From the sequence record MN871441.1: a DNA stretch of 64,000 nucleotides. One strand, written 5' to 3'. A model generated the notes under the pieces. That model was not told the origin of the DNA, did no database searches, and saw only the letters and a program-made list of their open reading frames with translations. Both the position numbers and the translations under genes were made by a program. Below, one piece after another: positions 24,652 through 54,727 of the stretch; within the stretch, counting starts at the first letter, position 1, and every line of letters begins with the position of its first letter.

Positions 24652-24744
24652 GCGTGAGTGGCGAAGTTGGTTGAAACGCATCGGACTTAAAATCCGATAC
24701 TGCATAATGGCACATCGTGGGTTCGATTCCCACCTCACGTACCA
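24652..24744 (+). tRNA. tRNA-Leu(TAA)
   Basis: Cloverleaf; TCGGA-ctTAAaa-TCCGA; long variable arm; GTTCGATTCC; CCA. Confidence 0.93.
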
Positions 24745-24749
24745 AATAC

Positions 24750-24815
24750 GAGATGATAAACTCAAATTACTTTTGTTGAATGAGCTTTTTGGACGTTATG
24801 TGAGTTTATCATCTC
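24750..24815 (+). ncRNA. Candidate small RNA closed by a 15-bp perfect stem
   Basis: GAGATGATAAACTCA / TGAGTTTATCATCTC. Confidence 0.45.
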
Positions 24816-24840
24816 TCAAATTCAATATGAGATGCTTAAT

Positions 24841-24978
24841 ATGAACGTATACATCAGAAATTACATGTGTGGAGTCCTTTGGGGTAGTATCTTCAACGAA
24901 GAACACTGTAAAGGTAAATGTGTAAAGATTATGCGCGGTAAACATTTGAAGCCTTTCTATCAAAAATCGAGATATTAA
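24841..24978 (+). CDS. Small hypothetical protein (45 aa)
   Basis: MNVYIRNYMCG...KSRY*, abutting the next ORF. Confidence 0.45.
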   Translation: MNVYIRNYMCGVLWGSIFNEEHCKGKCVKIMRGKHLKPFYQKSRY

Positions 24979-24979
24979 A

Positions 24980-25369
24980 ATGAAAGTGAAGCTTGGGGCT
25001 TACAACCTTAATGAAAAAAGTTCTTTGGTTAATACGAACGGATTAAAATTCATTTTGAATGAACAAGTTATAGATGAATTTTCTAAAAAACTACCTGTTC
25101 TAATCAATTTTGGTCAAAAATGTTTTAACATTGATAATGCTAAAGATACTCCGGATCCGGTTGGTATTCTTAATTCCATAGAAACTTACAAGAAAGATAA
25201 TATCATTATTGTTACTGGTGATGTAGAAATAACCAATGACAAAGTATATGATGTTCATGGGTGCCTTCCTTCTTTTTGTGTCCGATCTTTAGCTATTCGT
25301 AACGGTGATACTTACAAAGTTGGAGAAATTATTGCATGGGATATGGAAATATATGAAGGTTTATCATGA
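24980..25369 (+). CDS. Hypothetical protein
   Basis: 129 aa ORF. Confidence 0.7.
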   Translation: MKVKLGAYNLNEKSSLVNTNGLKFILNEQVIDEFSKKLPVLINFGQKCFNIDNAKDTPDPVGILNSIETYKKDNIIIVTGDVEITNDKVYDVHGCLPSFCVRSLAIRNGDTYKVGEIIAWDMEIYEGLS

Positions 25370-25764
25370 ATAAACATGATATTCATCTCATTGGTATTAG
25401 TAAGTTTATCAAGAAAGGTCTTACTGTGGTTCAATCAAGTTTGATCTTCAAACAAACCAGTGAAGAATGGAAAAATATCCATGGTGTTGATGTAGACAAG
25501 ATTTATTGCTATATTAACAACGAGGGAAAGGATATCTACGCAATTGGTAGACTTAGATCCTGTTGCGGACCTTGGTTGAGTGTTAGTTGTCGGTCTCTCC
25601 GTAAAAAAGGTTATATAGCATTTGACTTTAACGATGAAATTGAGATACCATATGGTTCAGGGATGAAAACTGCTTATAGGGTATTGTTTTCTGACACCCC
25701 TAAATACGAGTATGATGAAGAAGCTAGACATCCAGTCGCTTACTTCGAAAAATACTTCAAATAA
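25366..25764 (+). CDS. Hypothetical protein
   Basis: 132 aa, ATGA overlap with the previous ORF. Confidence 0.7.
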   Translation: MNKHDIHLIGISKFIKKGLTVVQSSLIFKQTSEEWKNIHGVDVDKIYCYINNEGKDIYAIGRLRSCCGPWLSVSCRSLRKKGYIAFDFNDEIEIPYGSGMKTAYRVLFSDTPKYEYDEEARHPVAYFEKYFK

Positions 25765-25808
25765 AAGTTAAACATCCTTTCTAACTGTGATATGATGTTT
25801 ATATAAAT
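25760..25808 (+). promoter_or_regulatory. tRNA promoter, 49-bp direct repeat copy 2
   Basis: Near-identical to 24601-24649; directly precedes tRNA-Arg. Confidence 0.8.
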
Positions 25809-25809
25809 T

Positions 25810-25886
25810 GCGCTGTTAGCTCAGTTGGATAGAGCAACGTTCTTCTAAAGCGTGGGTCACTGGTTCGAATCCAGTACGGCGCACCA
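25810..25886 (+). tRNA. tRNA-Arg(TCT)
   Basis: Cloverleaf; anticodon loop ctTCTaa; CCA. Confidence 0.95.
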
Positions 25887-25970
25887 CGGGATGTGGTGAA
25901 ATTGGCAGACACACTAGATTTAGGTTCTAGCGCCATAGGCGTGACGGTTCGAGTCCGTCCATCCCGACCA
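25887..25970 (+). tRNA. tRNA-Leu(TAG)
   Basis: CTAGA-ttTAGgt-TCTAG; variable arm; CCA. Confidence 0.93.
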
Positions 25971-25971
25971 A

Positions 25972-26047
25972 GCGGGTAAGGTGTTTATGGATACATGCAA
26001 GCCTTCCAAGTTTGAGTAGACCGGATCGTTACCGGCTACCCGCTCCA
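25972..26047 (+). tRNA. tRNA-Gly(TCC) with an atypical T arm
   Basis: GCGGGTA/TACCCGC acceptor; ctTCCaa; T loop ATCGTTA; CCA. Confidence 0.85.
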
Positions 26048-26058
26048 AGATTTAAAAT

Positions 26059-26128
26059 TGATGTGTTACAGCTATCAGCTCACCGTTGAAAGAATACGGA
26101 TAAGTCGGCTCGACTAAAGAACATATCA
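26059..26128 (+). ncRNA. Candidate ~70-nt structured RNA
   Basis: Terminal stem TGATGTGTT/AACATATCA enclosing hairpins CCGT/ACGG and AGTCG/CGACT. Confidence 0.5.
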
Positions 26129-26131
26129 TTT

Positions 26132-26208
26132 GGCCCCTTAGCTCAGTTGGTTAGAGCAACCGACTCATAATCGGTTGGTCACTGGTTCGAGTCCAGTAGG
26201 GGCCACCA
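26132..26208 (+). tRNA. tRNA-Ile2(CAT) (lysidine type), possibly Met
   Basis: GGCCCCT acceptor and overall sequence resemble enterobacterial ileX; ctCATaa; CCA. Confidence 0.88.
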
Positions 26209-26230
26209 AATTTTTGATGAGAGCTATATT

Positions 26231-26425
26231 ATGTCTGGTATAAAATCCATAATTGAAAATTGGTCAGTTGGTGATGGTATAATCCATTGGAAGAATGGAC
26301 GCCATAGTTTAGTAGTCTTTGGGTTTGCTCCAAATGGAGAACCTGCCTTTAAGTTTAAAGGTAAGAGTAAACTTACATCAGTAAGACAGATCGAAAAATC
26401 CATAGTTAATGCATATATTCTATAG
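26231..26425 (+). CDS. Hypothetical protein
   Basis: 64 aa, GAGAG RBS. Confidence 0.6.
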   Translation: MSGIKSIIENWSVGDGIIHWKNGRHSLVVFGFAPNGEPAFKFKGKSKLTSVRQIEKSIVNAYIL

Positions 26426-26434
26426 TTGTAAGCT

Positions 26435-26582
26435 CTCACGAATTTAATGGTCGTTGACCTTACGATAATAATGAAGCGATACAGAGTCCCATCGCTTCTA
26501 AAAATATCAAAAGGGATGTTGATGCGCGTATGTAGCCGGGTTATAATGACCAAGATTCATGAAGGGTGAAAGACCACCCTAA
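26435..26582 (+). ncRNA. Candidate ~150-nt multibranch RNA
   Basis: GAAGCGAT/ATCGCTTC and AGGGTG/CACCCT hairpins; long-range TGGTCGTT/AATGACCA. Confidence 0.5.
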
Positions 26583-26589
26583 ATATCAT

Positions 26590-26667
26590 AGCGGGGTGGA
26601 GAAGTCAGGAGTTCTCGCCAGACTCATTATCTGGAAATCGGTGGTTCAAATCCACCTCCCGCTTCCA
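26590..26667 (+). tRNA. tRNA-Met(CAT), initiator-like 5' end
   Basis: AGCGGGGTGGAG start; CCAGA-ctCATta-TCTGG; CCA. Confidence 0.88.
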
Positions 26668-26668
26668 A

Positions 26669-26744
26669 TGGCGTGTAGTTCAGTAGGTAGAACAGCGGAC
26701 TGTTAATCCGTATGTCGTGGGTTCGAATCCCACCTCGCCAGCCA
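26669..26744 (+). tRNA. tRNA-Asn(GTT)
   Basis: GCGGA-ctGTTaa-TCCGT; CCA. Confidence 0.94.
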
Positions 26745-26750
26745 AATTCT

Positions 26751-26841
26751 GGATGTTCGGCTACGATGGCGGTGTAGCGGCGGACTGTAAATCCGTTCCC
26801 TCTGGGTAAACAAGTTGGTTCGAATCCAACAGCATCCACCA
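26751..26841 (+). tRNA. tRNA-Tyr(GTA)
   Basis: GCGGA-ctGTAaa-TCCGT; variable arm; CCA. Confidence 0.92.
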
Positions 26842-26844
26842 AAT

Positions 26845-26990
26845 AGAAGAAGTTAGAAGACGTTCTGATAAAATCCTCGGAGACGATGCCCCCTTGCGGT
26901 TTTAAACCGTTACGGATAAGCACGGGGTAATCCAAATCAACCATTATAGGGATGTGGTCATCTGGTATGTAAAATACAGTTGGTTTGGAA
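26845..26990 (+). ncRNA. Candidate stable RNA between tRNA-Tyr and tRNA-Pro
   Basis: No ORF; CGGT-tttaa-ACCG hairpin; CCAAATCAAC/GTTGGTTTGG stem; internal AACCA at 26939-26943. Confidence 0.4.
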
Positions 26991-26995
26991 CTTTT

Positions 26996-27071
26996 CGGTG
27001 ATTAGCGCAGTTGGTAGCGCGTCTGGTTTGGGACCAGAGGGTCACAGGTTCGAGTCCTGTATCACCGACCA
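26996..27071 (+). tRNA. tRNA-Pro(TGG)
   Basis: TCTGG-ttTGGga-CCAGA; CCA. Confidence 0.95.
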
Positions 27072-27349
27072 CTTAGCACAAAGAACGGGTAACGACGTAT
27101 GCCCCGGAATAAGCCAGCCATAGAGAATCTGGATATCCTGAAACGTGCCTTTAGGTTTCAGGCGGGATTGGTAGTATAAAGACGATATGGTAACTACTCC
27201 TTGACAAGCAGGGTTGAACTTGAGGTAACTGTCCTTTACCAAACAACGAACAGATGGACAAAATCAGTTGAACGTCCTTCCTCCTTGTGATAGCATGTCA
27301 ACTACATTAGGATATAATCACAGTCTAACGATCCTGATTATAATCCGCT
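27072..27349 (+). ncRNA. Candidate ~280-nt structured RNA
   Basis: CCTGAAAC/GTTTCAGG and TATAATCA/TGATTATA hairpins; long-range GCGGGATT/AATCCGC and TTGACA/TGTCAA. Confidence 0.55.
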
Positions 27350-27425
27350 GCCGAATTAGCTCATCTGGTAGAGCACAGCCTTTGTAACGCTGGGGTGGTC
27401 CGTTCGAGTCGGACATTCGGCACCA
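27350..27425 (+). tRNA. tRNA-Thr(TGT)
   Basis: Cloverleaf; ttTGTaa; CCA. Confidence 0.93.
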
Positions 27426-33845: not shown

Positions 33846-36800
33846 TTAAGTTATCCGCTGTGCCAATGTTACGTTCCAAGAACCCCAACCGTCGCCGTTT
33901 TGGGAATTTGCTCTAGAAACACCCATCAGACGCCATGTACCATAGTTACAAGCAACCATATTAGTACCTTCCGCGTTCGAGAATGCAATCTGAGTACCTT
34001 GGAGAACAGTCCCCGGACCTTGTGGACCAAGGTTGGATTTGACTGTGACCATCGCATATGAACCAATATCCATATTGCCGCCGCCATTGACGACTGATCT
34101 CAGTATTACACCATCTGGAATTGGGTTACTTGGTGAATAAACTCGTTGACCTACGTCGTGAACACCACCATTAGCGTTAACAGAACCTGCTATTCCGGTA
34201 TTACCATTGTTATCAATAGACATTCTGAGTTTAGTTTCACCACCGGCACCATTACTTGATGTAAATCGAAGTTGACCGTCTGTGTTCATGTAAATCATTG
34301 TTGCCCAAAATCCGGGACGATGAAATTCTAGTCTGTTATTATTATTGCTAATGATAGAGGCATAACCACTATTAACACCTACAGATCCACCAACCTCAAT
34401 GTTTCCATTAACACTTAGGGAACCAGACATTGTTCCGCTGGTTGTGTTGAAACCCGTACTCATAGTAACCACACCGTTCGAACCTATCATAAATGGTTGG
34501 AGATTCCATACACCATCTTGATAACGATGGATACCAAGGTTACCATTAGATAGATCCATACCCATCCCCCAAGACAAACCTTGTTTGTTTTCGAACGGGG
34601 TGAATATCAGACCAGCATTATTGATAACCCGGAAAGATGGTGCAGCAATTCTGTCTTGGTTAGCAATAATCTCGCCATCATTAAACGTCATTACACGTAT
34701 GTTTGCAGTGTCTCCAGATCTTCTTACATATATGTATGGGTTTATACCAGAAGATTCTTGTGCTCCAAGCCCAAATACCCTAGTACCATCTGCACCACTT
34801 ACAAACATTGCAGTTCTTGCACTTAACTGATTTTGAAGTTCTGTTACTGTTGGGCTAACTTGTATTATCTGGTTTTCGCCTGAGTTACCATGTTTTAGTT
34901 TAAATGTGTTTCCTTCTGCTAATATATGAAATCTAGCATTAGAACCATCTTGAAAACTAATCGATGCACCATTATTAATCATAACAGCATTCTTTATGGT
35001 TGCAGTAGTTACCGCTCCAGTTAGAGTGCCACCAGACAGATTTAATTTAGTATTAAGTAAATTATCTGTTTCAGTTTTTGTGTATGCATTAAAATCACCA
35101 GCAGAAGGTTTATTACCAGTGTGATATATGGTGTAATCGTTACTTCCAATCCTTACCATTGGGTTATTTTTGCTTTCAAGATATACAGTACCAGTCTTAG
35201 CAGCCAGATATATATTGTTGCTCGCGGCGTTGATATATTCATCTGTTGCATCCCAACGAATTGCACCAGTCATGATACCACCAGACAGATTAAGCTTTTT
35301 GTTAAGCTCTGTGTTTATCTGTGCAGTTGTTAATGTACCAACGTCGGCGGCTGATGGTTTATTGCCGGTATGATATATGTCATAATCTGTGTTATTAACT
35401 TTAACCTTCGGATTGATAGTTCCAGAAGCTAATGTCAATCCAGATGGTGAGCGTTCGACGTAATAATCAGAACCACTACCAAGAGTCAATCTAGTGGTGT
35501 TGCCAGAGTTAAATCTAACATCCCCAGTTACAGTACCACCAGTTAAAGACAACGCCCCAACATCAGCGGAAGTAGGTTTAAACTCTTCGTTATAGTCACG
35601 ATACCAAGGCTTCCACGCACCACTTGAATATTGTGCTCTAGACCAAACTTCGGACGAGTTATATACCCAATATTTTTGAATAACGCCAGCGGAAGTAGTA
35701 ACAATAAGGTTACCAGCTTTCTCAACTGGATAGTTCAAACTAGTTAATGCTTTAGCGTTAGCAACTTGGCTATATATACCAGCGGTTTTAATATCGTTGA
35801 GGTTATCTGTATCTCTCAGTGTGATAATAGAACTAAAACCACCAAGAGCAACACCATCAACATATGCCTTGTTTGTTAAATGCATTGCCAACGTCGGAAC
35901 TTGGTTATTTGATATAGTACCGGTTGCATTAAAGACAGTTTCCCCAGTTACAGTTCCCGAACCATTTGGACGAATCACAACACCAGATGAACCACCACCA
36001 ATAATTGTTCTATTATCTAAATAGATTCCTTGGTTTGCATTACCGGAATATTGAAGTGCATAACCAGTTGTGGTTACAATAAATTTCTCTGCATTCACAT
36101 TACCGGTTTCGATCTGTACTTTCTTACCTGCATGGGTAAATTCAGCACCAACATCTCTACTTATTCTTAGTGTACTAGTGTCAGCAGTCGAACCATCAGA
36201 CCCTTTGCGATATCTAGAAGCTAAGAACAAAGTACCTTCATATTCACCGGTTGTGGTTGTGTTTGTTGCTTGACCTATAATTCTAGACAACTGATCGCCA
36301 CTATGGGGATCATATCGGTTTGTAGCACCAACTCTAAAACTAACCTCACCTATTGTGTATGGAATACCAGCAGCAACACCATCACGATATTTTTCCTTGG
36401 TATAAGATACGTAAGGATAAACAGAGTCGTCATTAGTAGAGTTATTGTGTCTTAGAATACCAGTTCTGTATGTGTTTACCTGTTCCCACACACCAGTCGG
36501 TAACCATGGTTGCCAACCTTCAACTGCATTAATCCATACCCTTGTAAACTCTCTTGGTTCTACAAATCCACCGACTGTTACCCAGTTACTGAATTTCTGA
36601 ACAGTCAAGTTATCGAAAGATCGTTGTTTAACCTCAACAATACCCGTATGAGTAGTTGCAGTTGCGGTATTGTCAGTTCCATTAGCCCAGTTACCATCAA
36701 CTGTAAAAACACCGTTGGTCTTAATTAGGTTGAAGTCACGAACACCACCGGTTACTGTGATCGCGTTGGGACTATCACCAACACCAAGACCCATACCACC

Positions 36801-37799
36801 CACAGACTGTTTGTTCAGAGAGGTATACATTTCCGCCCATGGCTGCCAAACACCGATATATTGACGACGAACCCATACACGATCTTGTGTATAAGAAAAG
36901 AATATTTGTGCATTCGCCCCGTTACCCCAACGGGTAACAAGGAGAGTTGATCCACTAGGACCAGTACCACCGTCGTTAGGAGTATTTTTTGTGTTTGCGA
37001 AAACACCATAGTTACCGGGCATAATTGCTTTATCGCAATCATCTTCNNGGTGGACGATCATATACAGCCATTGCCTTTACTTCTTCCGCNCTAGGCAAAT
37101 TACCTTTATGGAAAATATCATAGTTTGTATTTCCATAAGACACTTGAGGGATTAACCCCNGNAGCCATATTAAATCTTACTTGAGTNAGNGGTGTACCAT
37201 ACCAACCACTAAAAGCAANTCGTTGAGTCNGTAACGTCTCTATCTACTTTACCACCTTGGAAATAAAGTAANGAACCAGATGCAACNANACGNTGTGCNT
37301 ATGTATTGGTAGCAGAATCATAAACTTCAACTTGACCGTTGGANTTGATTCTATTNGCNTCAACCTGACCATTAACCATTAGGTTTCCAGTCATNGTATC
37401 NCCATCTCTATTAACAGCTCGAACAGGNAAACCGTCNAGNTTTGTNTTNTCTTCTTTNCTCATTGCCCCATGNGCGGATTGCGTTGCGTTATTAATTGAA
37501 ACTCGCGGACTTACACCAGTAGTAACGACGATTGGGAGAGTCCCGGTTACAGATTTCACCGATGTACTATCTAGGTTATCAACATAACCTTTAATGGCAA
37601 CTTCATTAGAATTGACAGGAGTTTTATATGTCAATGTTCCGGTAAAGGTTTTAGCCCCACCAATAGATTGATTACTAACACTATCAATAACCTCATTACC
37701 ATTATAAAACAGCTTAACGTCTTGCGGGGAAAATGGTAGGTTAGTCTGTGTCCAAACTAATCCACCCCCAGCGGTAGACGAACTCTTAAGGTCTGCCAT
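33846..37799 (-). CDS. Tail fibre protein, ~1300 aa (one gene, split by N-associated frameshifts at 37030-37230)
   Basis: gp36-like start MADLKSSSTAGGGLVW; YHTGNKP repeats; LNDIKTAGIY; tip GSYA...GTWRLMG; linking frames traced by eye. Confidence 0.85.
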
Positions 37800-37836
37800 T
37801 TTTAAATTCCTCTATTTTGAAATTGTTTCTACTCTT

Positions 37837-38160
37837 TTATTTAGGTAACAAAAAAGTCCCNTANTNNGGGACTTTTTGACATTGTGGNTCTTTCAGATCC
37901 TTTCTATAAGAACATAACATTCTATTTTGNGAATCTATATAAACACCTATNTTTTCNANCCAAGCNCTATANCTTAAACTNTCCTCATATGTCATNCCNA
38001 CATAAGTNGTTTCACCTTCCTTNATNACAGTCCATTTAGGAATATANGTTTTTACAGGNNTNGGTCTATTTGGATGNAACACTAATACCGGNTCTGGTNT
38101 CGGTGGNGTTGAACANGCAGCNANAACCACTATACACATCATAATTAGAATTTTTTTCAT
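37837..38160 (-). CDS. o-spanin lipoprotein (Rz1/pseT.2-like)
   Basis: Signal peptide with lipobox Cys, Pro-rich; ends MLCSYRKDL...QC. Confidence 0.8.
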   Translation of the reverse strand: MKKILIMMCIVVXAXCSXPPXPXPVLVXHPNRXXPVKXYIPKWTXXKEGEXTYXXMTYEXSLXYXAWXEXIGVYIDXQNRMLCSYRKDLKXPQCQKVXXXGTFLLPK

Positions 38161-38534
38161 TTACATTCCCCCAGAGTGAGACAATCCATTCGGTTACCAA
38201 ACTCTTCGTAATCTTTCTGGATTATCTTCTCTACCAGCTTGGGTTTCTTGTTTATTGCATCCTTACCACGACTAGCATTAGATTCAAGCGTACCAATGCG
38301 CTTAGAAAGCTCTCTGTTCGATTTCTCTTCTGTTTGGCTATACTCATTAGACTGTTGTTTGAAATCGCTTATACTCAATTCTATGGCGGATAATTTGGAC
38401 GTCGTTGTTTCTAGTTGTTTGGTCATCTCTCCTATTGTTATAGCCTGTGATTCGATCTTGTTGAACATATACCAAGAAGAACCACCAACCAGAATAAGAA
38501 GAACCCCAAATATAATTGCCTTGTATCTTACCAT
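38157..38534 (-). CDS. i-spanin (Rz/pseT.3-like)
   Basis: N-terminal TM segment, coiled coil, KKPKLVEKII motif; late promoter at ~38569. Confidence 0.8.
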   Translation of the reverse strand: MVRYKAIIFGVLLILVGGSSWYMFNKIESQAITIGEMTKQLETTTSKLSAIELSISDFKQQSNEYSQTEEKSNRELSKRIGTLESNASRGKDAINKKPKLVEKIIQKDYEEFGNRMDCLTLGECK

Positions 38535-38599: not shown

Positions 38600-39083
38600 T
38601 TACTTTTTATCCCATTCGACACAAATCAATTCTTCAAAGTCGTCTTCGTCAAAGCAATTTTCAATTACTTGTGAGATAACATCCCAATCCCCACCAGCAA
38701 CACCCGCCCCAATCTTTGGGAATATAAGTCGATACCCTTCATATCCAAAATCTTCCGCTAACGAAACCATTCTCTAATGCATCCAAACGAAGATCTCGAC
38801 CGGGGAAATATTGGGTATATAGGTTAATCAATCGAGAATCATAATCTAAGGGGGTCCAGCTATATTGACCAAGCATTCCAATATCCACCTGACCGTTTGT
38901 CTTAAACAGCCGTTGGAAATGTGCNTCNANANNANGCNCANCNGGGAANTNNNNGGNAATANNNNNANCAATCNNGAANCATNNNNTANGNNNNTNCANC
39001 NATANNGANCAANNTTNNAATNTNCANNNNNNCTNNGTCTTNNACATGNCGNTNANATCGCCTTTAACATAACGAATTTTCAT
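38600..39083 (-). CDS. Macrodomain (tk.4-like) protein, N-rich and frameshifted
   Basis: Starts MKIRYVKGD; INLYTQY.PG; C-terminal frame FPKIGAGVAGGDWDVI. Confidence 0.8.
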
Positions 39084-39739
39084 TTTTCTACATCTCTTTG
39101 CTTTGGATATTGTTTTTGTTCCATCTTGTTAACTTTATCAAGTTTTTTAATGTGAACTAACGGATAAACATAACTATGTTTTCCCGGTACTACCACTTCC
39201 TCTAGAAGACCATCATTTTTCATATTTTGTAATTTTTGTGCAAAAGGTTTCAACATACCTTTATATTTCGTTCTCATTGCCCTACTGTGATATAATTTTC
39301 CGTCTGGTGTTTTTAATAGTTTATCTTTGGGAGTTTCTCCCACATATATCCAGTTTGTTGCCTGATATATAATACCAACGTGGTCATGAAACGGGTCTGC
39401 ATAACTAATTACAACTTTATGAGTTTTTAATTTTTTCAATATTCTCAGACACGAACCAATAACCCACGACTCAGAATTATGAGGTAATTCATCCAATAAT
39501 ACAAGACGTCGTAATTCCAATACATCACATTCTTTATCAGAAAACTTTTTCCATGCAGTTGTACTTAGTTGTCCAAATATAACAGCACCAACCAATTCCC
39601 CATTTTTATCATCAATACGAAAACAATATGATGTTTTTAGACCATTGATATTATGAGAATAATGATGGGTCTCTACGAATTCCTTTATTTCTTTTCTTTC
39701 ACATAAAGATAATTCGTAACCCCTCCATTTTATGGTCAT
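39080..39739 (-). CDS. Mom-like DNA adenine-modification (GNAT-fold) protein
   Basis: HHYS, LVGAVIFG, LELRRLV, ESWVIG, VISYAD..H.GIIYQATNW.Y.G are Mom-family motifs. Confidence 0.8.
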   Translation of the reverse strand: MTIKWRGYELSLCERKEIKEFVETHHYSHNINGLKTSYCFRIDDKNGELVGAVIFGQLSTTAWKKFSDKECDVLELRRLVLLDELPHNSESWVIGSCLRILKKLKTHKVVISYADPFHDHVGIIYQATNWIYVGETPKDKLLKTPDGKLYHSRAMRTKYKGMLKPFAQKLQNMKNDGLLEEVVVPGKHSYVYPLVHIKKLDKVNKMEQKQYPKQRDVEK

Positions 39740-40046
39740 TCGATAACCTCCTTATGAAATTCACCAATAACTTTTTCTGGTGAATGACCCAAGACAACCA
39801 TATTGACTGGGTGGGAAATGGTATGAACACCGCTAACAAAATAAAATTTAACTACGTTTGTTTCTGTAATCCCACGAGATTCGTCAAGGGTTACGAAATC
39901 ATACATCCAATCGTTGAATCCGCGATATTTTGCATTGTTCAAAATAATTTCAGCAGCAAGCCCGAAAGACCNNNCTNTATCCTTCAATTCTTTAACTGTC
40001 GATATNNAACACCGACACNGAATNNANNNNNAANNNTCTTNNTNNT
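39736..40046 (-). CDS. Hypothetical protein (N-containing)
   Basis: C-terminal part of the 171-aa ORF call; start uncertain. Confidence 0.45.
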
Positions 40047-40611
40047 TAATAAAAACGGTTNCGTTCGCAACTAGTNNGATNTTCTTGNGCCNNNTCNNAA
40101 NANCNNAAACNGNAATTACAANNTTCATCGTNGTCNATATGAAACACGATGAATCCATTCTTAAGAATTTCATAATTATAAAAATTACGTTCGCAACTAG
40201 TACGATATTCTTGAGCCGCTTCGGAAGACCGAAAACGGTAAATGGTATCAAAGTTCATACGTGGGTATTGNNNNNNTTGGANATNNNNGNNTNNANNNCN
40301 ANNCNATNTNNNNNNGAAATTCNNNANTNNCTNTNTCTNGNGAANGACNNNACACNNNNNTNTTNACTNGATNGNAAATNGCTTGATNNAGCGNNGCTAA
40401 CTNACAATNACCAATTTTNAGGNTACNTGTTNTGTTNNGNNNTTCNNCGNNNTTCNTCAANGGTTNNGNNATCATCNCNNNNAGATGCGGGTTNAANCTC
40501 NCNANATTTNGACNNNGTTNNAAGANNATTATCAAGNAGNANNNCCGTNANTACANNNNCNNCATCGTNGNTNTNNANNACTAATNNNNCNANNCTTNNG
40601 AANNTCNTCAA

Positions 40612-42727: not shown

Positions 42728-43099
42728 TTATTCTACACTTTCGTCGGCTGGTGTCAATATGTTTTTAGAAATAAAATTTATTACCCCATCATCTGGACGT
42801 TCAAACAACCAAATGCAATTTAGATATCCCAGTGAACTGGAGTCTTCATGGTCAATGCGACCCACTGGGATCTCACTGTCGTAACAAAACCCTTTGTAAT
42901 CATCACATACATAGAAACCACACTGTTTACTGTAAACAATACCAACACAAACGCAAGATTCGGGCCAAAGTTCAACCAGACCATCATTGNTTACAGTTAC
43001 AGCAAATTTGTCATATTTGTGTTCGTTTACTGGGAGGTCGAGAACCAAATTATCAATTATAACAGGAATGTTAAAACTCTTAAAAGGTGGTGTATACAT
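42728..43099 (-). CDS. Hypothetical protein
   Basis: 123 aa ORF. Confidence 0.7.
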   Translation of the reverse strand: MYTPPFKSFNIPVIIDNLVLDLPVNEHKYDKFAVTVXNDGLVELWPESCVCVGIVYSKQCGFYVCDDYKGFCYDSEIPVGRIDHEDSSSLGYLNCIWLFERPDDGVINFISKNILTPADESVE

Positions 43100-43326: not shown

Positions 43327-43356
43327 AAAAGGGATCCTCAACGGGATCCCTTTTTT
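43327..43356. terminator. Terminator, GGGATCC family copy 3
   Basis: AAAA-GGGATCCT-caac-GGGATCCC-TTTTTT at the end of asiA. Confidence 0.8.
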
Positions 43357-52455: not shown

Positions 52456-52908
52456 CTACCTCTTTTTATTGTTAATTTTTAAGAATATGGATGTAAATTT
52501 ATCACCACAACACGACCGATGTTGTGTATGTGGAACAACACCAAGAGATTCCCAAAATAAAACAGAATAAGAATATCCAGTATAAGCCCAATGACTTTCA
52601 CCGTCAACCTTCAATCTGTTTACTAGTTCGGAACCGACACCCGAGTTACGAAATTCATCTTTGACGTAACACATCATAAAGTTTTTATAACCACTCATGA
52701 TCCCACGGGTTGCTAGTCCAACGGGGTTACCGTCCTTGTACTTGATTGCAACTTTGGTGATAAACCTCTTTTCAAATTCGATAACTTGTACGAGATATGG
52801 TTTCAATGACCACCCTTCAACATACATTTTCTTATCTAAAAGATATTGACAGATCTCTTTGATATGAGACCCAGAATAAACCTTTACATCACCATAGTCA
52901 ACAATCAT
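52456..52908 (-). CDS. GNAT-family acetyltransferase
   Basis: YVKDEFRNSGVGSELV acetyl-CoA motif; FWESLG. Confidence 0.75.
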   Translation of the reverse strand: MIVDYGDVKVYSGSHIKEICQYLLDKKMYVEGWSLKPYLVQVIEFEKRFITKVAIKYKDGNPVGLATRGIMSGYKNFMMCYVKDEFRNSGVGSELVNRLKVDGESHWAYTGYSYSVLFWESLGVVPHTQHRSCCGDKFTSIFLKINNKKR

Positions 52909-53732: not shown

Positions 53733-54011
53733 TTACCCCTCATAATTCTTTTCAAGTACATCAATGATATGAGAAACCATAGCTTTGTTCTTATCCTTTT
53801 CCCAACTAAAGTGTCTGATATCCATAGAGAAAAGACTTTTTGGGAGAGAAAATTTGCGCATTAAAAACCCATCACCTCGACTCGTGGGGTCATCAACAAA
53901 GAAATCATATTCATCTTCCCATACACGAATTTCTTTAAGATATTTCTTGACAAATTGAGAAACTGTAATATCAATTGTTTTTGTTGTTACTACTTGGTAT
54001 GTATGTTTCAT
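53733..54011 (-). CDS. Hypothetical protein
   Basis: 92 aa ORF. Confidence 0.65.
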   Translation of the reverse strand: MKHTYQVVTTKTIDITVSQFVKKYLKEIRVWEDEYDFFVDDPTSRGDGFLMRKFSLPKSLFSMDIRHFSWEKDKNKAMVSHIIDVLEKNYEG

Positions 54012-54727
54012 CANTAAAATTCCGCTGTTGCTATTTCGACCATGGGACTTACNCCATGCCANTCAGAAAGATAAATCGAAGTGTCTACACCACATCCCGG
54101 TTCAAGACGGATCCCTGTTTGCTCGGTAAACTTCAAATACTTATTTGACGGTTCTTTATCACAGAACGAACGTACTCCGCTATATTTAAATCCAGCACTC
54201 ATCTGAGGGATAATAAAGACCCCGAATTCAGATACCTTACTAGCGGCCTCTATTACCTTATATTCGAATTCTGCGCCAGTATACCGACCTTTATAACCAG
54301 ATGTATTGATGTTTCCAAAAGGTGGATTGCTAATACAAAAATCAAACCGGTCATTAGTGTTATCACAGTATTCCAGTGCATCACCACGGATCCAGTTTGC
54401 ATGAGGTACGACTCGTTTACCAACCTCAAAATATTCGTGGTTCAACTCAACACAAGTGACATCGTTGTCATACAACCAGAAAGACAGACCACCAATACCA
54501 GCACATAGATCCAATACAGAACGGTCTTGGTTAACTTCGATCATAGCATCACGAGCTAACATAACTGGGGTGAAGAATGCACCAGCAAGGCCATTCATCT
54601 GGGTAGCACCTTCTTGGTAATTCTCAAGGATAAAAAGACGCTCATTCCATGAAAGTTCCTTATCCGAGTGAACAAGATCCATAGCCTTATTATGGAGTTT
54701 CAACGCCTGTTTGCTGATCTTAGCCAT
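54011..54727 (-). CDS. Amino (N6-adenine type) DNA methyltransferase
   Basis: AFFTP, VLDLCAGIGGL (motif I) and CISNPPFG (motif IV). Confidence 0.85.
   Translation of the reverse strand: MAKISKQALKLHNKAMDLVHSDKELSWNERLFILENYQEGATQMNGLAGAFFTPVMLARDAMIEVNQDRSVLDLCAGIGGLSFWLYDNDVTCVELNHEYFEVGKRVVPHANWIRGDALEYCDNTNDRFDFCISNPPFGNINTSGYKGRYTGAEFEYKVIEAASKVSEFGVFIIPQMSAGFKYSGVRSFCDKEPSNKYLKFTEQTGIRLEPGCGVDTSIYLSXWHXVSPMVEIATAEFX

What the first reader, a model, noticed from the sequence alone, without database searches (positions are those of the whole stretch)
39080..39739. Mom-family DNA modifier in a T4-like phage
The full set of Mom motifs is present. Mu Mom converts adenine to N6-(1-acetamido)adenine to block restriction, whereas T-even phages rely on modified cytosine. 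With an amino-methylase (54011-54727) and a separate GNAT (52456-52908), this phage may use an adenine-based protection scheme. Such modification could also degrade sequencing quality (speculative).
Basis: partly seen in the sequence, partly recalled or inferred. Interest (0 to 1): 0.65.

Follow-up and report, generated by a model that had tools for sequence, protein, structure and literature searches.

The report
Mom-type DNA-modifying gene, already annotated
This T4-like Aeromonas phage carries an intact, optional one-gene cassette related to phage Mu's Mom enzyme, which decorates adenines in phage DNA to block restriction enzymes; public records of sister phages already label the gene this way, so the finding is real but ordinary.

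Summary
The ORF at 39080-39739 (minus strand, 219 aa) is a genuine Mom-family GNAT. It matches Pfam Mom at E 7.5e-40 and PHROG "Mom-like" at 1.4e-68. Its model (pLDDT 93.6) matches the Mu Mom crystal structure 8bv8 far better than any ordinary GNAT (Z 20.9 against 14.0 or less).

The catalytic residues R111 and S124 of Mu Mom are kept (R78, S91), as are H58/Y59, D149, Y159, the HTH-like insertion and the C-terminal YPK. Mu's essential R151 is not kept. That arginine occurs only in the Mu clade; this protein has the commoner ADxxxxHxG loop.

The window is a Ceceduovirus (Straboviridae). The gene is 100% identical in AsSzw2 and about 95% in relatives whose records already call it Mom. It is a seamless 656-nt cassette, absent from CC2, Assk, Asswx_1 and Aszh-1, and under purifying selection (dN/dS 0.07).

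The lineage lacks the T-even hydroxymethylcytosine genes.

No modification has been measured in these phages. The scan reached the same verdict earlier on related DNA (s1-159559).

The parts
39080..39739 (-). Mom-family GNAT gene (219 aa), the predicted DNA adenine N6-modifying enzyme
   Evidence: ORF; Pfam Mom E 7.5e-40; phrog_1384 at 1.4e-68; best structural match is Mu Mom 8bv8, Z 20.9 over 202 residues; dN/dS 0.069 against AS-zj
39747..39753 (-). Shine-Dalgarno AAGGAGG, 7 nt before the ATG
   Evidence: Read from the sequence. The Mom-less CC2 allele reads AAGGATA at the same place
39736..39739 (-). ATGA overlap: stop of the upstream gene (phrog_17527, function unknown) and start of Mom; left junction of the cassette
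39080..39083 (-). ATGA overlap: stop of Mom and start of the Tk.4-like gene; right junction of the cassette
39084..39739 (-). 656-nt one-gene cassette, present in AsSzw2, AS-szw, AS-zj, AS-sw, AS-yj, P19 and G2, and cleanly absent from CC2, Assk, Asswx_1 and Aszh-1
   Evidence: Megablast coverage, CC2 annotation, three-way alignment. The exact boundary is ambiguous within the repeated ATGA

Best explanation
The gene encodes a functional Mom-family GNAT. By analogy with Mu Mom, it most likely takes glycine from host (or phage) Gly-tRNA(Gly) and puts it on N6 of adenines in double-stranded phage DNA after replication. The adduct then rearranges to N6-carbamoylmethyl-adenine (6-NcmdA, the same compound as N6-(1-acetamido)adenine). 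This makes the DNA resistant to host restriction enzymes. It is a self-contained accessory cassette that a subset of Ceceduovirus phages carry, in a lineage without the T-even cytosine-modification pathway. It lies in a translationally coupled run of small genes downstream of asiA, with no Mu-style Com regulator and no T4 late promoter, so it is probably made early or in the middle of infection. Shown here: family membership, fold, catalytic residues, cassette structure, purifying selection, and absence of the hmC pathway in the relative. Inferred: DNA as substrate, Gly-tRNA as donor, the product, the anti-restriction role and the timing.
For: Pfam, PHROG and PDB sequence matches. AlphaFold model pLDDT 93.6. 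Mu Mom 8bv8 is the top structural hit at TM 0.77 and Z 20.9, rmsd 2.8 A over 202 residues, model 1-213; ordinary GNATs reach Z 14.0 or less and about 135-155 residues. Equivalents of R111, S124, H58, Y59, D149 and Y159, the HTH-like insertion and the C-terminal YPK are present; their roles are from PMC13219725. A lone 656-nt gene fits an enzyme that needs only a ubiquitous host co-substrate. dN/dS is 0.069 with dS 0.36. The gene is intact, without indels, in contigs from four independent runs. AS-zj has one td-type thymidylate synthase next to frd, and no gene 42, alpha-GT, beta-GT, D12-class Dam or Com, with positive controls in T4 and Mu. There is no TATAAATA on the coding strand anywhere near the gene.
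Against: No nucleoside, SMRT or restriction data exist for any Ceceduovirus. Identity to Mu Mom, the main characterised member, is only 24-28%. Mu's essential R151, the dimer residue W48, W181 and the basic N-terminal tail are not conserved, so donor, target motif or product could differ. Which subfamily the paper's two active metagenomic homologues belong to could not be checked, because the supplements are not held. The timing rests on gene position and a missing consensus; sigma70-like sites upstream are no more frequent than in shuffled sequence (23 found against 20.5 expected). The hmC-pathway absence was tested in AS-zj, not in the window's own genome, which is not held.
Confidence: 0.68

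Rival explanations
1. It is a Mom-family DNA modifier with different chemistry or specificity from Mu Mom. The subfamily has a His-type active-site loop (ADPxHxH), a longer and strongly conserved basic insertion (YHSRAxRTKYxGxxKPF) and no N-terminal tail. It may use another aminoacyl-tRNA or acyl donor, or another target motif, and so give a different adenine adduct.
For: R151, which is essential in Mu, is F117 here and is variable across 44 subfamily members, while H120 is over 90% conserved. W48 and W181 are not conserved. The insertion is 5 residues longer, with its own invariant residues. PMC13219725 says co-substrate and substrate could not be predicted from structure alone.
Against: The two residues the paper singles out as conserved across metagenomic space and essential (R111, S124) are kept. 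The His-type loop is the commonest type in the family rather than an oddity. The paper's randomly chosen metagenomic homologues were active.
Confidence: 0.2
2. It is a GNAT that acts on something other than DNA, such as a protein, a tRNA or a small molecule, perhaps with acetyl-CoA, and only shares ancestry with Mom.
For: GNATs are very versatile, and several phage records annotate relatives simply as 'acetyltransferase'. There is a weak sub-threshold match to the uncharacterised XF1762 family.
Against: The Mom-specific HTH-like insertion, proposed to bind DNA and essential in Mu, is present, very basic and superposes on 8bv8. The full-length Pfam Mom match is five times the cut-off. Ordinary GNATs match much worse.
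Confidence: 0.08
3. It is a decaying or functionless hitch-hiking gene.
For: It is dispensable, since four sister phages lack it. The gene immediately downstream is frameshifted in this window.
Against: dN/dS is 0.069 at dS 0.36. The gene is intact in nine phage records and four sequencing runs. All family-invariant residues are kept, and it has a strong ribosome-binding site.
Confidence: 0.03

Closest known systems
Phage Mu Mom (methylcarbamoylase; PDB 8bv8; Pfam PF25680)
   Same: Same Pfam family and same GNAT fold, with the HTH-like insertion (Z 20.9). Equivalents of H58, Y59, R111, S124, D149 and Y159 and the C-terminal YPK are present. It is a single gene that needs no dedicated partner.
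   Different: Only 24-28% identical. It lacks R151 (F117; it has the His-type loop with H120), W48, W181 and the 33-residue N-terminal extension with its basic tail. The insertion is 5 residues longer. There is no Com, no Dam/OxyR-type control and no late promoter. It sits in a lytic T4-like phage rather than a temperate transposable phage.
Annotated orthologues in sister phages (AS-zj YP_009834621.1 'Mom-like DNA modification protein'; AS-szw, AS-sw and AS-yj 'Mom'; vB_AdhaM_G2)
   Same: 95-100% identical protein at the same locus with the same flanking genes.
   Different: Nothing of substance. The AsSzw2 record, which is 100% identical, simply has no annotation. The Mom alleles differ more (92.3% nt) than the flanks do (97-100%).
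The large His-loop Mom subfamily in other phages (Salmonella FSL SP-031 and VSiP, Vibrio ICP1, Klebsiella K64-1, Enterococcus phiSHEF2-like, Synechococcus S-SSM7, many metagenomic contigs)
   Same: 43-65% identity. Shared ADPxHxH loop and YHSRAxRTKY insertion motif. Typically a lone gene among replication or nucleotide-metabolism genes.
   Different: Different phage backbones. I found no member of this subfamily with published modification chemistry.
Mom homologue of T4-like Aeromonas phage AsFcp_1 (Angelvirus; PX29 group)
   Same: Also a Mom-family gene in a T4-like Aeromonas phage.
   Different: It belongs to the Mu-like clade (it keeps the R151 equivalent), is 301 aa long and ends in ...DLFGDF, which resembles the polymerase's clamp-binding tail. 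The protein studied here ends ...YPKQRDVEK and has no such tail.

Membership tests
Mom family (Pfam PF25680) | Full-length match to the family HMM above the curated cut-off | tested here: met
   137.2 bits against 27.1, model positions 4-202 of 202; phrog_1384 at 1.4e-68
Mom family (Pfam PF25680) | GNAT fold closest to the Mu Mom crystal structure rather than to ordinary GNATs | tested here: met
   8bv8_A: Foldseek E 1.5e-13, TM 0.77; VIA Z 20.9, 202 residues, against Z 14.0 or less for other GNATs
Mom family (Pfam PF25680) | Catalytic residues R111 and S124 (Mu numbering) | tested here: met
   R78 is invariant; S91 is Ser or Thr throughout; their roles are from PMC13219725
Mom family (Pfam PF25680) | Active-site residues H58, Y59, D149 and Y159 | tested here: met
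   H26, Y27, D115 and Y125 are invariant in 13 sequences from eight or more lineages
Mom family (Pfam PF25680) | Essential R151 | tested here: not met
   F117 in the BLAST, MAFFT and HMMER alignments. The arginine is found only in Mu, JD024 and AsFcp_1. All other lineages have ADxxxxHxG, with the His at H120 here. It therefore defines the Mu clade, not the family
Mom family (Pfam PF25680) | HTH-like insertion (Mu 175-209), essential for activity | tested here: met
   Residues about 143-187 with helices 152-156 and 165-175. They align to Mu's insertion and fall within the superposed range 1-213
Mom family (Pfam PF25680) | Tight homodimer through W48 | tested here: inconclusive
   W48 aligns with K16, a variable position in the subfamily.
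Mom family (Pfam PF25680) | Basic unstructured N-terminal tail (Mu 11-19) that aids activity | tested here: not met
   The protein starts at about Mu residue 36; the ORF cannot be extended upstream
Mom family (Pfam PF25680) | Product 6-NcmdA on dsDNA, with Gly-tRNA(Gly) as donor | not testable with these tools
   Needs nucleoside LC-MS or an in vitro assay. No raw long reads of this phage were available
Mu-type mom regulation | Com zinc-ribbon translational activator upstream of mom | tested here: not met
   PF10122 is absent from AS-zj and is found in Mu as a positive control. The upstream gene is also present in Mom-less CC2
T-even glucosyl-hydroxymethylcytosine system | Gene 42 dCMP hydroxymethylase (a second thymidylate-synthase-family gene) | tested here: not met
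   AS-zj has one hit, td-type and next to frd. T4 gives td (two exons) plus gene 42. Tested in the relative, not in the window's own genome
T-even glucosyl-hydroxymethylcytosine system | Alpha- and beta-glucosyltransferases | tested here: not met
   No PF11440 or PF09198 match in AS-zj. Both are found in T4

The most novel reading that the evidence does not exclude
The His-loop Mom subfamily to which this gene belongs has at least 783 members and includes ICP1, K64-1, Enterococcus and Salmonella phages. It has no R151 equivalent and carries a longer conserved basic insertion. It might install an adenine adduct, or use an aminoacyl-tRNA, different from Mu's glycine-derived 6-NcmdA. Ceceduovirus virions would then carry an undescribed DNA hypermodification.
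Probability: 0.15. Interest if true: 0.6.

Novelty: already known. Interest (0 to 1): 0.2.

Why it matters
The practical value is modest. Ceceduovirus phages are being developed as therapy against Aeromonas in aquaculture. An optional anti-restriction gene could help explain host-range differences between near-identical phages such as AS-zj and CC2. It also supplies the candidate that a 2021 survey of non-canonical bases in T4-like phages said was missing for AS-szw and AS-zj; that paper never mentions Mom (PMC8056088). The natural pairs of phages with and without Mom offer a ready-made test of whether the common His-loop Mom subfamily makes the same product as Mu Mom.

Tried and rejected
- Clamp-binding tail (lead from scan note s1-156855): rejected for this gene. 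The relative's polymerase ends ...SLDDLFG and Mom ends ...YPKQRDVEK. The tail belongs to the AsFcp_1-type Mom.
- Phage tRNA-Gly(TCC) at 25972-26047 as a dedicated glycine donor: rejected. The same tRNA is at 98.6% identity or more in the Mom-less CC2, Assk, Asswx_1 and Aszh-1.
- Functional link to the methyltransferase at 54011-54727 or the weak GNAT at 52456-52908: rejected on distribution.
- T4 late promoter upstream: none found. Sigma70-like sites are at the level of shuffled sequence.
- The window's own genome is not held, so genome-wide statements rest on AS-zj.
- Supplementary files of PMC13219725 are not held, so the active homologues A and B could not be placed in a subfamily.
- Sequencing runs: only assembled contigs of relatives at 93-94% identity. 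They show presence and intactness but cannot show modification or expression.
- The large profile search (search of protein representatives) was not run, because the word search and family scans already settled the identity.

Full report
OBSERVATION. The window holds an uninterrupted ORF with no masked bases at exactly 39080-39739 on the minus strand (219 aa). The sequence shows an AAGGAGG ribosome-binding site 7 nt before the ATG. The start overlaps the stop of the upstream gene (ATGA), and the stop overlaps the start of the downstream gene (ATGA), so the gene is translationally coupled within an operon. It matches Pfam PF25680 (Mom) over the full model at E 7.5e-40, with 137 bits against a cut-off of 27.1. 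It also matches phrog_1384 "Mom-like DNA modification protein" at 1.4e-68. The only solved structure it matches by sequence is Mu Mom, 8bv8 (profile E 1.2e-16).

WHAT PHAGE THIS IS. The region matches only T4-like Aeromonas phages of the genus Ceceduovirus (Straboviridae, Emmerichvirinae). The protein is 100% identical in AsSzw2 and about 95% identical in AS-szw, AS-zj, AS-sw, AS-yj, P19 and vB_AdhaM_G2. Several of these records already call the gene "Mom" or "Mom-like DNA modification protein". No paper on these phages discusses it.

FAMILY MEMBERSHIP AT RESIDUE AND FOLD LEVEL. Direct identity to Mu Mom is low: 28% over 147 residues at E 6e-13, and 24% in a multiple alignment.

An AlphaFold model built on 44 homologues is confident, with pLDDT 93.6 and pTM 0.86. 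Its best structural match is the Mu Mom crystal structure: Foldseek E 1.5e-13 and TM 0.77, and VIA Z 20.9 at rmsd 2.8 A over 202 residues, spanning model residues 1-213. Ordinary GNATs reach only Z 14.0 and about 135-155 aligned residues.

The 2026 study of Mom (PMC13219725) lists the residues that matter. They map as follows:
- Conserved: H58/Y59 = H26/Y27, R111 = R78, S124 = S91, D149 = D115, Y159 = Y125.
- The HTH-like insertion is present, 5 residues longer and very basic.
- Not conserved: the essential R151 (F117 here), the dimer residue W48 (K16), W181 (L149) and Mu's N-terminal extension.

I then aligned Mom homologues from Mu, Pseudomonas JD024, Aeromonas AsFcp_1, Listeria A511, Bacillus SerPounce, the archaeal virus HGTV-1, a mycobacteriophage and an Acinetobacter phage. 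The R151 arginine occurs only in the Mu-like clade (Mu, JD024, AsFcp_1). Every other lineage has ADxxxxHxG with a conserved histidine, H120 here, apart from one subfamily sequence (P0089) that has Pro there. The window protein therefore carries the majority form of this loop. A C-terminal YPK motif turned out to be family-wide and is present at residues 211-213. Membership in the Mom family is thus secure. Identity of mechanism with Mu Mom is an inference.

AN OPTIONAL CASSETTE UNDER SELECTION. CC2, Assk, Asswx_1 and Aszh-1 cover only the flanks of the region. In CC2 the Tk.4-like gene directly abuts the small upstream gene. A three-way alignment shows a clean 656-nt indel bounded by ATGA on both sides, and the Mom-carrying allele has the better Shine-Dalgarno sequence.

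Between this window and AS-zj, dN/dS for Mom is 0.069 at dS 0.36. The gene is 92.3% identical at nucleotide level, while the flanks are 100% identical immediately upstream and about 97% over wider stretches. This mosaic pattern suggests that Mom alleles are exchanged between phages.

Contigs from four independent public runs carry the gene at about 93-94% identity without indels. The nearest outside relatives are metagenomic proteins at 56-65% identity. One of them lies alone among ribonucleotide-reductase and ligase genes on a 122-kb phage contig. A lone gene fits an enzyme that needs only a ubiquitous co-substrate.

The lineage does lack T-even cytosine modification.
- AS-zj (97% complete) has a single thymidylate-synthase-family gene, td-type and next to frd.
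- AS-zj has no alpha- or beta-glucosyltransferase.
- The same searches on T4 find td, gene 42 and both transferases.
- This agrees with PMC8056088, which found no known non-canonical-base genes in AS-szw and AS-zj and did not mention Mom.

The proposed partners, however, are not linked to Mom.
- The gene at 54011-54727 is a gamma-type amino-methyltransferase with an NPPF motif (phrog_3820). It occurs in 288 phage records, including Mom-less Assk, RB43 and JSE.
- The "GNAT" at 52456-52908 scores below Pfam's cut-offs. All four combinations of GNAT and Mom presence or absence occur among the sister phages.
- The phage tRNA-Gly(TCC) at 25972-26047 is attractive because Mom uses Gly-tRNA(Gly), but it is equally present in the Mom-less phages.
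- AS-zj has no D12-class Dam.

REGULATION. No Com homologue exists in AS-zj (positive control in Mu). The upstream gene is also present in Mom-less CC2. No TATAAATA late-promoter consensus lies on the coding strand anywhere near the gene. Sigma70-like sites upstream, at 42757, 41509 and 41065, are no commoner than in shuffled sequence. The gene lies in the run of small genes between asiA and the spanin genes. Early or middle expression is therefore my inference, not a result.

VERDICT. The clamp-tail idea from note s1-156855 applies to the AsFcp_1-type Mom, not to this one. The remaining open question is whether the common His-loop subfamily makes the same 6-NcmdA product as Mu Mom. The natural phage pairs with and without Mom would answer it with one mass-spectrometry experiment.

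LIMITS.
- The window's own genome is not held.
- The paper's supplements are not held.
- No raw reads of the phage exist in the served runs.

Noticed in passing
window 38600-39083 (minus strand): The Tk.4-like gene just downstream of Mom (phrog_335 'phosphatase') is split into two ORFs, 38739-39083 and 38600-38770. A 5-nt deletion relative to both AS-zj and CC2 (GGTTTCG-----TTAGCGG) causes this. It is either a real frameshift or an assembly error.
   Followed up: partly
window 40040-40260 (minus strand): The small gene two places upstream of Mom seems to contain an internal duplication in this window. The peptide motif AAQEYRTSCERN appears twice, and the DNA differs from AS-zj and CC2 here. 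The stretch is partly masked with N, so it could not be resolved.
   Followed up: no
L009 (AS-zj 34884-38189), ORFs 2-1048 and 1045-2220: The T4-type DNA polymerase of the relative is encoded as two adjacent overlapping ORFs (a split gp43). The second ends in the clamp-binding-like tail SLDDLFG.
   Followed up: no
L017:511-1416 (Aeromonas phage AsFcp_1): A different T4-like Aeromonas phage carries a 301-aa Mom homologue of the Mu-like clade. Its C-terminus (...DLFGDF) resembles the polymerase's clamp-binding tail, in line with scan note s1-156855.
   Followed up: partly
window 24652-27425: A cluster of ten tRNA genes on the plus strand (Leu x2, Arg, Gly, Met x2, Asn, Tyr, Pro, Thr).
   Followed up: no
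window 52456-52908: The weak GNAT-like gene is itself an accessory gene. It is present in AsSzw2, AS-yj, P19, G2, Aszh-1 and Asswx_1, and it gave no match in AS-zj, AS-szw, AS-sw, CC2 or Assk.
   Followed up: partly
window 43327-43354: A perfect GC-rich palindrome (AAAAGGGATCC...GGATCCCTTTT) scores as a terminator on both strands, upstream of the Mom operon.
   Followed up: no
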